Source: Euprymna scolopes (taxonomy: Eukaryota). From it: DNA of 64,000 nt. A program made the translations under genes and the position numbers. Below are positions 27,866 to 28,496 of this stretch, piece after piece; position 1 is the first letter of the stretch; each line of letters begins with the position of its first letter. The notes under the pieces were generated by a model. That model searched no databases. It had not been told where the DNA came from and saw only the letters and a list, made by a program, of their open reading frames with translations. The stretch lies in the NCBI GenBank assembly GCA_053919585.1, contig CM132816.1. One strand, given 5' to 3'.

Positions 27866-28043
27866 TGCTTTGATGCGTTTTTGGATAGTGTTGATTGCCC
27901 ATTATTTAATACACTGTATTATATATATTCAACGCTATTTCACACGATTAATGGTAGCCGAATGGATACGGTCTCCGCTAATCGAGCCAGAGATGTCTCG
28001 TGTCGCGGGGTTCGAATCGTTCGACTGGTAGTAATTGTGACAC

Positions 28044-28089
28044 CCTGCACTGAAGAATCCCGAAAGGATGAAACACTAGTGTCTGTAGG
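28044..28089 (+). ncRNA. Type I hammerhead ribozyme, copy 1
   Basis: CCTGCA-CTGAAGA-ATCC cgaaa GGAT-GAAAC-ACTAGT-GTC/TGTAGG. 6-bp stem I, 4-bp stem II, palindromic stem III ACACTAGTGT, GUC cleavage after 28083. Confidence 0.92.
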
Positions 28090-28389
28090 TATTTAATTAT
28101 TATAGTAAAAAAATAATTATGACAGCCCCTTTAAGAAATACGTTTCTTATAGTTGAGCACTTTCTGTTGAATAAAAGTCGGTCAATTTAGCTCTTATGCG
28201 TAGATCGTCGTATAACGACTTGATCACTGTCTGTCTGACGTAATGAACATTTAAATTTAAAAAATGTTTAAAATTCAACGCTATTTCACACGATTAATGG
28301 TAGCCGAATGGATACGGTCTCCGCTAATCGAGCCAGAGATGTCTCGTGTCGCGGGGTTCGAATCGTTCGACTGGTAGTAATTGTGACAC

Positions 28390-28435
28390 CCTGCACTGAA
28401 GAATCCCGAAAGGATGAAACACTAGTGTCTGTAGG
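28390..28435 (+). ncRNA. Type I hammerhead ribozyme, copy 2
   Basis: Identical to 28044-28089. Cleavage after 28429. Confidence 0.92.
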
Positions 28436-28459
28436 TATTTAATTATTATAGTAAAAAAA

Positions 28460-28496
<37 letters not shown>

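What the first reader, a model, noticed from the sequence alone, without database searches (positions are those of the whole stretch)
27927..28466. Pol III (tRNA-head) retrozyme-like element: two identical repeats, each with A/B boxes and a complete hammerhead ribozyme
Seen: 194-bp identical direct repeats 346 bp apart. Each has an A-box (27955-27965), a B-box (28009-28019, spacing like a long-variable-arm Ser/Leu tRNA) and a type I HHR (CUGAAGA/GAAA, GUC site, 6-bp stem I). Known: metazoan non-LTR retrozymes and PLE pLTRs carry tandem HHRs whose self-cleavage releases monomers that can circularise. Inference: this is a SINE-retrozyme hybrid that supplies its own internal Pol III promoter, is processed to a 346-nt RNA (28084-28429) containing an intact promoter, and is retrotransposed in trans by the PLEs abundant in this genome. 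Identical repeats imply recent activity. I cannot confirm novelty without a search.
Basis: partly seen in the sequence, partly recalled or inferred. Interest (0 to 1): 0.9.

Follow-up and report, generated by a model that had tools for sequence, protein, structure and literature searches.

The report
tRNA-headed hammerhead retrozyme in (TA)n
This is one very young copy of a short non-coding jumping element of a mollusc genome that combines tRNA-gene-type promoter boxes with a self-cutting hammerhead RNA. Its copies show the insertion scars of Penelope-like retrotransposons, and the design is already known from blood-fluke Sm-alpha elements.

Summary
A 194-nt exact direct repeat with a 346-nt period makes one 540-bp insertion of 1.57 units. 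Each repeat carries matching A and B boxes and a type I hammerhead (HHR) with an intact core.

It is not an assembly artefact. The 5.9-Gb genome holds at least 212 near-identical 344-bp units, and the 39 insertions analysed lie on many contigs.

All 39 insertions end within a few nt of position 37 past the predicted ribozyme cut (32 exactly) and abut (AT)n. Their 5' ends vary and show TA microhomology. Arrays span 1.2 to 10.5 units.

Penelope-like elements (PLEs) with long open frames are abundant in this genome. They show the same 3' geometry: an HHR-like motif, a 33- or 62-nt tail, then (AT)n.

The best reading is a recently active non-LTR retrozyme copied by PLE-type target-primed reverse transcription (TPRT) from an uncut multimer or a circle.

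Pol III use of the boxes is plausible but untested. There is no tRNA cloverleaf, and 5' ends do not cluster at the expected start site.

The HHR can only work as a dimer. The design matches Schistosoma Sm-alpha, so this is a new member of a known kind. This scan has already noted several such families, probably including this one, elsewhere in this genome.

The parts
27927..28466 (+). Whole insertion: 1.57 units of the 344/346-bp family
27927..28083 (+). 5'-truncated first unit (unit positions 190-346). It contains A box, B box and hammerhead copy 1.
28084..28429 (+). Full unit between the two predicted hammerhead cut sites. This is the predicted 346-nt released RNA. It differs from the 344-bp family consensus only by two extra A in an A-run.
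28430..28466 (+). 37-nt 3' tail (unit positions 1-37, ...AAAAATAATTAT). 32 of 39 copies end exactly here and the other 7 end 1-4 nt away or with a 1-nt variant.
27955..27965 (+). A box TAGCCGAATGG, copy 1
28009..28019 (+). B box GGTTCGAATCG, copy 1
28301..28311 (+). A box, copy 2
28355..28365 (+). B box, copy 2
28293..28376 (+). Degenerate tRNA-like segment. It has a good D arm (GCCG/CGGT), a long variable arm, and poor acceptor, anticodon and T stems. ARAGORN finds it only at 80% of its threshold. The equivalent segment in copy 1 is 27947-28030.
28044..28089 (+). Type I hammerhead copy 1, predicted cut 28083/28084
28390..28435 (+). Type I hammerhead copy 2, predicted cut 28429/28430
27917..27926 (.). 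A/T-only stretch (10 nt, ending tattatatat) at the 5' junction
28467..28496 (.). (AT)n microsatellite at the 3' junction. All 39 copies have an A/T-rich tract there, pure (AT)n in most.

Best explanation
The stretch is one insertion of a recently active, non-coding, non-LTR retrozyme family with a 344-bp unit and 38% G+C. Going 5' to 3' from the ribozyme cut, each unit holds a 37-nt tail, an AT-rich spacer, a degenerate tRNA-derived segment that keeps A and B boxes, and a type I hammerhead. Inferred cycle: (1) A genomic copy with two or more hammerheads is transcribed. Transcription is probably by Pol III from the internal A/B boxes (about 0.5-0.6), otherwise by read-through. (2) Two hammerhead copies pair through their palindromic helix III (ACACUAGUGU) into a double hammerhead and cut after GUC. 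In this copy that would release the 346-nt RNA 28084-28429, which a host RNA ligase could circularise. (3) A Penelope-like RT/GIY-YIG protein nicks a (TA)n microsatellite and starts reverse transcription internally, at unit position 37, on a template that still has the 346|1 junction. That template is a circle (about 0.55) or an uncut multimer (about 0.35). (4) The RT runs round 1 to 10 times. (5) The 5' end is joined by TA microhomology. What is shown: the anatomy, the copy structure, the target, the youth of the family, and the parallel with PLEs in the same genome. What is inferred: transcription by Pol III, cleavage, circularisation and the identity of the RT.
For: Family and youth. There are at least 212 matches among the 40 scored of 490 candidates, on many contigs. 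In 133 full units from 39 loci there are about 17 private substitutions in 45.7 kb, roughly 0.04%. Ends. The 3' end is at unit position 37 in 32 of 39 insertions and within 4 nt, or with a 1-nt variant, in the rest. It is always followed by an A/T-rich tract, mostly pure (AT)n. No copy ends at the cut site. The 5' ends spread over positions 1-320. They begin with AT or TA in 26/39 against 18% expected (p=3e-11), and five cluster at positions 35-36. Arrays span 1.2-10.5 units. Likely long target-site duplications are seen at L038 and L050. PLE parallel. The genome has 15,395 GIY-YIG candidates. All 150 scored exceed the cut-off, and many have open frames of about 806 aa. One such frame has RVT_1 plus a C-terminal GIY-YIG domain. 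Seven copies of that PLE end in an HHR-like motif, then 33 nt (2 copies) or 62 nt (5 copies), then an A/T-rich tract, mostly (AT)n. This matches the published PLE 'tail', internal RT start and AT-rich or (TA)n targets (PMC11167929, PMC8557442). Local alignment of the retrozyme 3' 107 nt to the PLE 3' end scores 36, against 19.8+-3.4 for shuffles. Ribozyme. The core is canonical. Cofolding two copies gives the double hammerhead at -31.4 kcal/mol, against 2 x -9.0 for monomers. Promoter. The A+B box pattern is absent from 100 simulated windows. The sense strand has no TTTT, while the antisense strand has T7 and T6 runs. RNA. Contigs of four RNA libraries cover the whole unit at word depth 100-33,000, and three contain the 346->1 junction.
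Against: The hammerhead scores below Rfam's gathering threshold and has A-U at pair 10.1-11.1. There is no tRNA covariance-model hit, and ARAGORN finds a poor cloverleaf only at a relaxed threshold. Only 1 of 39 5' ends falls where a Pol III start would be, at positions 198-212. Absence of TTTT is not significant, with chance P of 0.09-0.16. The unit RNA is not unusually structured (z=-1.24), unlike published retrozyme circles. The PLE examined has a different tail sequence and U instead of C at core position 3, so the direct partner is not identified. No inverted 5'-truncated copies, common in PLE insertions, were seen in the 39 arrays. RNA-library contigs cannot prove transcription, ends or circularity. 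In one array (L048) units 2 and 3 share a variant that unit 1 lacks, which a single monomeric circle does not predict. The 39 loci are the best-scoring candidates, so youth and multi-unit structure are biased upward.
Confidence: 0.75

Rival explanations
1. It is the same PLE-mobilised retrozyme, but the A/B boxes are an inert relic of a captured tRNA or SINE fragment, or serve only as part of a roughly 100-nt hairpin. Transcription then comes from read-through or Pol II, as reviews assume for animal retrozymes.
For: There is no cloverleaf and no tRNA model hit. The segment folds as one long imperfect hairpin. 5' ends do not cluster at a Pol III start. The TTTT absence is not significant. The highest word depth was in a polyA-selected library. 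A review states that metazoan retrozymes seem to lack promoters (PMC7761336).
Against: Both boxes match consensus closely at tRNA-like spacing, a pattern not seen in 100 simulations. Earlier unchecked notes of this scan report several unrelated tRNA-head plus hammerhead families in this genome, which would suggest the pairing is selected. Sm-alpha elements appear to be transcribed by Pol III (PMC6765202). With a circular or multimeric template, 5' ends are not expected to mark the start site.
Confidence: 0.25
2. It is an ordinary tRNA-derived SINE mobilised by a LINE that has a (TA)n-type microsatellite tail. The hammerhead would be a passenger.
For: It has an A/B-box head and a fixed 3' end followed by a simple repeat, as in many LINE/SINE pairs. 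LINE RT fragments are common here.
Against: Insertions are multi-unit head-to-tail arrays with 5' ends anywhere in the unit, not single units starting at a Pol III start site. The 3' end lies 37 nt past a hammerhead cut, as in the PLE copies of the same genome, which also abut (AT)n. No LINE with this tail was seen in the sequence held.
Confidence: 0.06
3. It is a local tandem duplication, satellite expansion or assembly artefact with no mobility.
For: Within the window alone it is just a 1.57-unit tandem repeat beside microsatellites.
Against: The 39 independent loci lie on many contigs, have different flanks and share essentially the same 3' end. The sequence is also present in public DNA and RNA runs from 11 studies.
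Confidence: 0.01

Closest known systems
Sm-alpha / Sj-alpha SINE-like elements of Schistosoma (Ferbeyre 1998; Laha 2000; as summarised in PMC6765202, PMC2770079, PMC8490949)
   Same: Both have a unit of about 335-346 bp that is dispersed and tandem. Both have a tRNA-related part (Sm-alpha copies are called tRNA-Gln by tRNAscan) and are described as apparently Pol III transcribed. Both carry a type I hammerhead with a very short helix III that frees units from multimeric transcripts. In both, tandem copies are needed to release a full unit.
   Different: The phylum differs (mollusc against flatworm). No sequence homology was tested, because no Sm-alpha sequence was available to the tools; the Rfam type I model scores only 25.6 bits here. 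This head is too degenerate to be called a tRNA. Here the insertion signature (fixed end at +37, (TA)n target, TA microhomology) and a PLE parallel are documented.
Metazoan non-LTR retrozymes (Cervera and de la Pena 2020, PMC7229834; review PMC7761336; PLE link in bioRxiv 10.64898/2026.07.22.740005)
   Same: Both show a type I hammerhead in every unit, short tandem units within 150-450 bp, low G+C, no coding capacity, no LTR/PBS/PPT, co-occurrence with PLEs, and presence in transcriptome data.
   Different: Published animal retrozymes are said to lack promoters, whereas this one carries A/B boxes. The predicted unit RNA is not strongly self-paired (z=-1.24). Invertebrate retrozyme hammerheads usually cut as monomers, whereas this one needs a dimer, as in axolotl and newt.
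Penelope-like elements: pLTR, 'tail' and internal RT initiation (PMC11167929; PMC8557442)
   Same: Both insert as partial tandems, with a fixed 3' end a few tens of nt downstream of a hammerhead, AT-rich or (TA)n targets, and variable 5' ends. The PLE copies of this genome show two 3' ends 29 nt apart, both abutting (AT)n.
   Different: This element has no ORF and a 344-bp unit instead of about 3 kb. Its tail sequence differs from the PLE family examined. No adjacent inverted copy is present.
Classical tRNA-derived SINEs (including cephalopod Ceph-SINEs)
   Same: Both have an internal A/B box module and are non-autonomous.
   Different: These insertions are multi-unit, have no 5' end defined by a start site, carry a hammerhead and have no LINE-type tail. 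Similarity to Ceph-SINEs could not be tested.

Membership tests
Metazoan non-LTR retrozyme | Type I hammerhead with conserved core in each repeat unit | tested here: met
   RF00163 matches over the full model at 28044-28089 and 28390-28435, with CUGAAGA/GAAA/GUC present. The score of 25.6 bits is below the gathering score of 34. The motif is invariant in 133 units.
Metazoan non-LTR retrozyme | Short head-to-tail repeats (150-450 bp), dimers to multimers, dispersed in the genome | tested here: met
   The unit is 344 bp. Arrays of 1.2-10.5 units lie at 39 loci on many contigs.
Metazoan non-LTR retrozyme | Low G+C, non-coding, no LTR/PBS/PPT | tested here: met
   G+C is 38%. Only short chance ORFs cross the element.
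Metazoan non-LTR retrozyme | Expressed and processed to unit-length circular RNA | tested here: inconclusive
   Contigs of four RNA libraries cover the unit and three contain the 346->1 junction. Contigs cannot show ends, circularity or even transcription.
Metazoan non-LTR retrozyme | Highly self-paired unit RNA | tested here: not met
   The MFE is -81.9 kcal/mol against -75.1+-5.5 for shuffles, z=-1.24.
Sm-alpha-like hammerhead SINE | tRNA-type internal Pol III promoter (A and B boxes) | tested here: met
   The boxes are met at motif level only. TAGCCGAATGG and GGTTCGAATCG start 54 nt apart, and the combined pattern occurs 0 times in 100 simulations. Promoter function was not tested.
Sm-alpha-like hammerhead SINE | Hammerhead with minimal helix III acting in cis or trans on multimers | tested here: met
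   In silico, the monomer helix III is impossible and the double hammerhead folds at -31.4 kcal/mol against -18.0 for two monomers.
Sm-alpha-like hammerhead SINE | Sequence homology to Sm-alpha | not tested
   No Sm-alpha sequence was available to the tools, and PMC108972 is not held.
Classical tRNA-derived SINE | Head recognisable as a tRNA (cloverleaf or covariance model) | tested here: not met
   There is no RF00005 hit at E<=10 in 701 nt or in 95 nt. ARAGORN finds it only at -ps80, with poor stems.
Classical tRNA-derived SINE | Single-unit copies whose 5' end is the Pol III start | tested here: not met
   Arrays are multi-unit, and only 1/39 5' ends falls within positions 198-212.
PLE-type insertion signature | Fixed 3' end at an internal site downstream of the hammerhead, with partial-tandem structure | tested here: met
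   32/39 copies end at +37 and the rest end within 4 nt or with a 1-nt variant. PLE copies in the same genome end 33 or 62 nt past an HHR-like motif.
PLE-type insertion signature | AT-rich or (TA)n target | tested here: met
   An A/T-rich tract, mostly pure (AT)n, lies 3' of all 39 copies and of 8 PLE copies.
PLE-type insertion signature | 3' region shared with an autonomous PLE of the same genome | tested here: inconclusive
   There is weak local similarity over the hammerhead region (score 36 against 19.8+-3.4), but the tails differ. Further PLE families could not be fetched.
PLE-type insertion signature | Adjacent inverted 5'-truncated copy | tested here: not met
   All hits within each of the 39 arrays lie on one strand. 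Inverted copies are present at the PLE loci. This feature is frequent but optional in PLEs.

The most novel reading that the evidence does not exclude
This may be a self-promoting retrozyme. Its Pol III A/B boxes would drive terminator-free multimeric transcripts, and a double hammerhead would cut these into 344-nt units that are then circularised. The genomic arrays would then be direct footprints of rolling-circle reverse transcription of that circle by a Penelope-like RT. The footprints are a fixed start 37 nt past the cut, up to 10.5 turns, and 5' joining by TA microhomology. That would be the first sequence-level evidence for rolling-circle retrotransposition of animal retrozymes, and for an internal promoter in them outside flatworms.
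Probability: 0.3. Interest if true: 0.65.

Novelty: new member of a known kind. Interest (0 to 1): 0.45.

Why it matters
How animal retrozymes are transcribed and copied back into DNA is still open. Reviews say they seem to have no promoter, and the PLE link rests mostly on co-occurrence. This family is unusually clean material. Its copies are nearly identical and have precisely mappable ends. They show an internal RT start 37 nt past the ribozyme cut, a (TA)n target, microhomology at the 5' junction and a ceiling near 10 units. PLEs with long open frames in the same genome show the same end geometry. The family offers a testable case for Pol III-driven retrozyme expression and for PLE-mediated, possibly rolling-circle, retrotransposition. 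It does not reveal a new kind of system.

Tried and rejected
1. Rfam at gathering thresholds finds no hammerhead here; the hit appears only in E-value mode.
2. The tRNA model finds nothing, even on 95 nt.
3. ARAGORN at default settings finds nothing.
4. Folding the unit, the hammerhead and the tRNA-like part alone gave z-scores from -0.1 to -1.2, so there is no thermodynamic support.
5. Absence of TTTT as a Pol III read-through signature is only suggestive, with P of 0.09-0.16.
6. Target-site duplications are mostly unreadable inside (TA)n. Only L038 and L050 show likely long duplications.
7. The search for the direct PLE partner failed. Only chance-level matches of up to 16 nt (mostly 10-11 nt) link the unit to ten GIY-YIG loci. 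Rfam finds no hammerhead in those loci. My simple core-motif search matched only L069, and the PLE motif was found later by eye at the copies' 3' ends.
9. No second copy of the family and no copy of the L076-type PLE lies in the window.
10. Within-array variant patterns could not separate a circle from a linear multimer, because the arrays are almost invariant.
11. Ferbeyre 1998 (PMC108972) is not held.
12. Searches found no paper on cephalopod or mollusc tRNA-headed hammerhead elements, nor on Pol III promoters in retrozymes.

Full report
1. Observation.
The window holds a 194-nt exact direct repeat, 27927-28120 and 28273-28466, with a period of 346. I numbered a unit from one predicted ribozyme cut to the next (28084-28429). 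On that numbering the stretch is unit positions 190-346, then 1-346, then 1-37, all at 100% identity. It is therefore a single 540-bp block of 1.57 head-to-tail units.

Each copy has an A box, TAGCCGAATGG (27955, 28301), and a B box, GGTTCGAATCG (28009, 28355). The combined degenerate pattern occurs nowhere else in the 64 kb and in none of 100 Markov-1 simulations.

Each copy also matches the Rfam type I hammerhead over the full model, at 28044-28089 and 28390-28435. The score is 25.6 bits, below the gathering score of 34, with E=7e-4 in 701 nt. The match shows CUGAAGA, GAAA, a GUC cut site and a 6-bp helix I.

2. It is a dispersed, very young family.
The unit finds at least 212 matches in the 40 scored of 490 candidate places of the 5.9-Gb assembly. 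Most are 344 bp long and about 99% identical, in head-to-tail runs on many contigs. I fetched 38 further loci with flanks.

Among 133 full units from 39 loci, nearly all equal one 344-bp consensus. There are about 17 private substitutions and a few indels in 45.7 kb, roughly 0.04%. The window's unit differs only by two extra A in an A-run. The loci are the best-scoring ones, so older copies are under-sampled.

Public runs from 11 studies hold the sequence, six of them labelled RNA.

3. Insertion anatomy.
32 of the 39 insertions end exactly at unit position 37 (...AAAAATAATTAT). The other seven end 1-4 nt away or with a 1-nt variant. All are followed at once by an A/T-rich tract, pure (AT)n in most. 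No copy ends at the ribozyme cut.

The 5' ends are spread over positions 1-320. They start with AT or TA in 26/39, against 18% expected (p=3e-11). Five cluster at positions 35-36, the most TA-like spot of the unit, which gives whole numbers of units. Only one lies where a Pol III start would be, at 198-212.

The upstream flank is also TA-rich in about half of the loci. L038 and L050 show likely long target duplications. Array size runs from 1.2 to 10.5 units, and four independent arrays have 10.3-10.5 units.

This pattern matches target-primed reverse transcription. Priming occurs in a (TA)n tract, at a fixed internal site of a template that still carries the 346|1 junction. That template is an uncut multimer or a religated circle. 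The 5' end is then joined by microhomology. The pattern is not what unequal crossing-over or a start-site-defined SINE would leave.

4. The PLE parallel.
A GIY-YIG search of the genome gives 15,395 candidates. All 150 scored exceed the cut-off, and many have open frames of about 806 aa. The frame in L076 has RVT_1 followed by a C-terminal GIY-YIG domain, which is the domain order of a canonical endonuclease-bearing PLE. Other copies are 91-98% identical to L076, and several have adjacent inverted truncated copies.

The 3' ends of seven copies read as follows: an HHR-like motif (UUGAAGA, GCCCG/CGGGC, GAAAC...GUA), then 33 nt (two copies) or 62 nt (five copies), then an A/T-rich tract, mostly (AT)n. 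A second PLE family (L073) also ends on (TA)n.

Two alternative ends about 30 nt apart, an internal RT start downstream of the hammerhead, and AT-rich or (TA)n targets are the published PLE signature (PMC11167929; PMC8557442).

The retrozyme's last 107 nt align weakly with this PLE's 3' end, scoring 36 against 19.8+-3.4 for shuffles. The tails differ, and the PLE motif has U at core position 3. This PLE is therefore a model of the mechanism, not the identified partner. I could not fetch more PLE families.

5. The ribozyme.
The core is canonical except for an A-U pair at 10.1-11.1. Helix III is ACAC/GUGU closed by UA. A 2-nt loop cannot close a hairpin, so ViennaRNA rejects that monomer structure. 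Two copies cofold into a double hammerhead with a 10-bp helix III, at -31.4 against 2 x -9.0 kcal/mol.

This is the dimer-dependent type described for axolotl and other amphibians (PMC7229834); Sm-alpha-type Schistosoma hammerheads likewise have an extremely short stem III (PMC8490949). In the window the two copies lie 346 nt apart. They could pair in cis and release 28084-28429. Cleavage itself is untested.

6. The promoter claim.
The boxes and the D arm (GCCG/CGGT) point to a tRNA or tRNA-SINE origin, with spacing like a long-variable-arm tRNA. However, the tRNA model finds nothing. ARAGORN needs 80% of its threshold and draws a poor cloverleaf. The segment's MFE fold is one long hairpin.

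The sense strand has no TTTT while the antisense has T7 and T6, which suits Pol III read-through. Chance gives this in 9-16% of shuffles. The first TTTT downstream of the element is at 28607.

Contigs of four RNA libraries cover the whole unit at word depths of 100-33,000, and three include the 346->1 junction. That shows presence, and likely expression, but neither the polymerase nor the ends. I put Pol III use at 0.5-0.6.

7. Comparison and novelty.
A unit of about 340 bp with a tRNA-related part, apparent Pol III transcription and a type I hammerhead that frees units from multimers is the Sm-alpha/Sj-alpha design of Schistosoma (PMC6765202; PMC2770079; PMC8490949). The wider class is the metazoan non-LTR retrozyme (PMC7229834), recently argued to derive from PLE pLTRs (bioRxiv 10.64898/2026.07.22.740005). 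A review states that retrozymes seem to lack promoters (PMC7761336), so the boxes are of some interest.

I found no paper on such elements in cephalopods or other molluscs. The giant squid genome paper only counts 235 Rfam hammerheads.

The scan's own earlier notes list several tRNA-head plus hammerhead families in this same genome. One has a 347-nt unit and is probably this family. Follow-up agents reached the same 'known kind' verdict. I reached my reading before seeing those notes.

The genome also holds canonical hammerheads (43-57 bits), some in arrays with a period of about 410 bp.

8. The organism.
Three facts are consistent with a decapodiform cephalopod: 5.9 Gb, more than 40 contigs of 57-220 Mb among those seen (numbered up to C46), and 'mollusc' labels on RNA runs. 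The first two fit from my general knowledge of cephalopod genome size and chromosome number. This is inference only.

9. Verdict.
The element is a new member of a known kind, with an unusually clear insertion signature.

Noticed in passing
window 19772-19866 (-): A partial 5S rRNA-like match (model positions 14-109) scores 35.1 bits, just under the gathering score of 38. It may be a 5S pseudogene or a 5S-derived SINE head.
   Followed up: no
window 53889-53960 (-): tRNA-His(GTG) gene, found by both Rfam (38.7 bits) and ARAGORN.
   Followed up: no
window 27319-27512: A 95-nt inverted repeat is 98% complementary with a 4-nt loop. It lies inside LINE-type RT fragments: an NYRPISLL motif on the + strand just after it, and a KLDxxKAxGPDxIP-type frame on the - strand at 27500-27805. 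It looks like an inverted duplication of a LINE fragment, directly upstream of the retrozyme.
   Followed up: partly
window 31871-32470 (-) and 47807-49345 (-): Two open frames have RVT_1 domains (E=1e-16 and 4e-35). They are other retroelement remains and do not resemble the L076-type PLE at the DNA level.
   Followed up: partly
L063, L064, L067, L068 (G000 contigs C39, C33, C24, C10): Four independent arrays all measure 3556-3599 bp (10.3-10.5 units), and none is longer. This ceiling is close to the length of a PLE insertion. It may reflect RT processivity, or it may be sampling.
   Followed up: no
window 28382 (unit position 299): All or most RNA-library contigs read C, while the window and all 133 genomic units read T. 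Other variants (28140, 28151, 28165, 28200, 28207) are also common in RNA contigs. This may be a species or strain difference, other subfamilies, or editing. It needs DNA of the same individual to resolve.
   Followed up: no
G000:C8:10432194-10435515 and G000:C3:89840417-89842627: Canonical type I hammerheads (48-53 bits, above gathering) recur with a period of about 410 bp. There are nine in a row on C8, and a head-to-head pair of arrays on C3. These are other retrozyme families. The sequence could not be fetched.
   Followed up: no
L069 (G000:C553:29970-33197): The best GIY-YIG hit lies on a small contig, and by eye its frame reads like a bacterial UvrC N-terminus rather than a PLE. The contig may be a bacterial symbiont or a contaminant.
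   Followed up: no
L048 (G000:C13): Units 2 and 3 counted from the 3' end share 119A>G, but unit 1 does not. This is the only within-array pattern that argues against copying from a single monomeric circle.
   Followed up: partly
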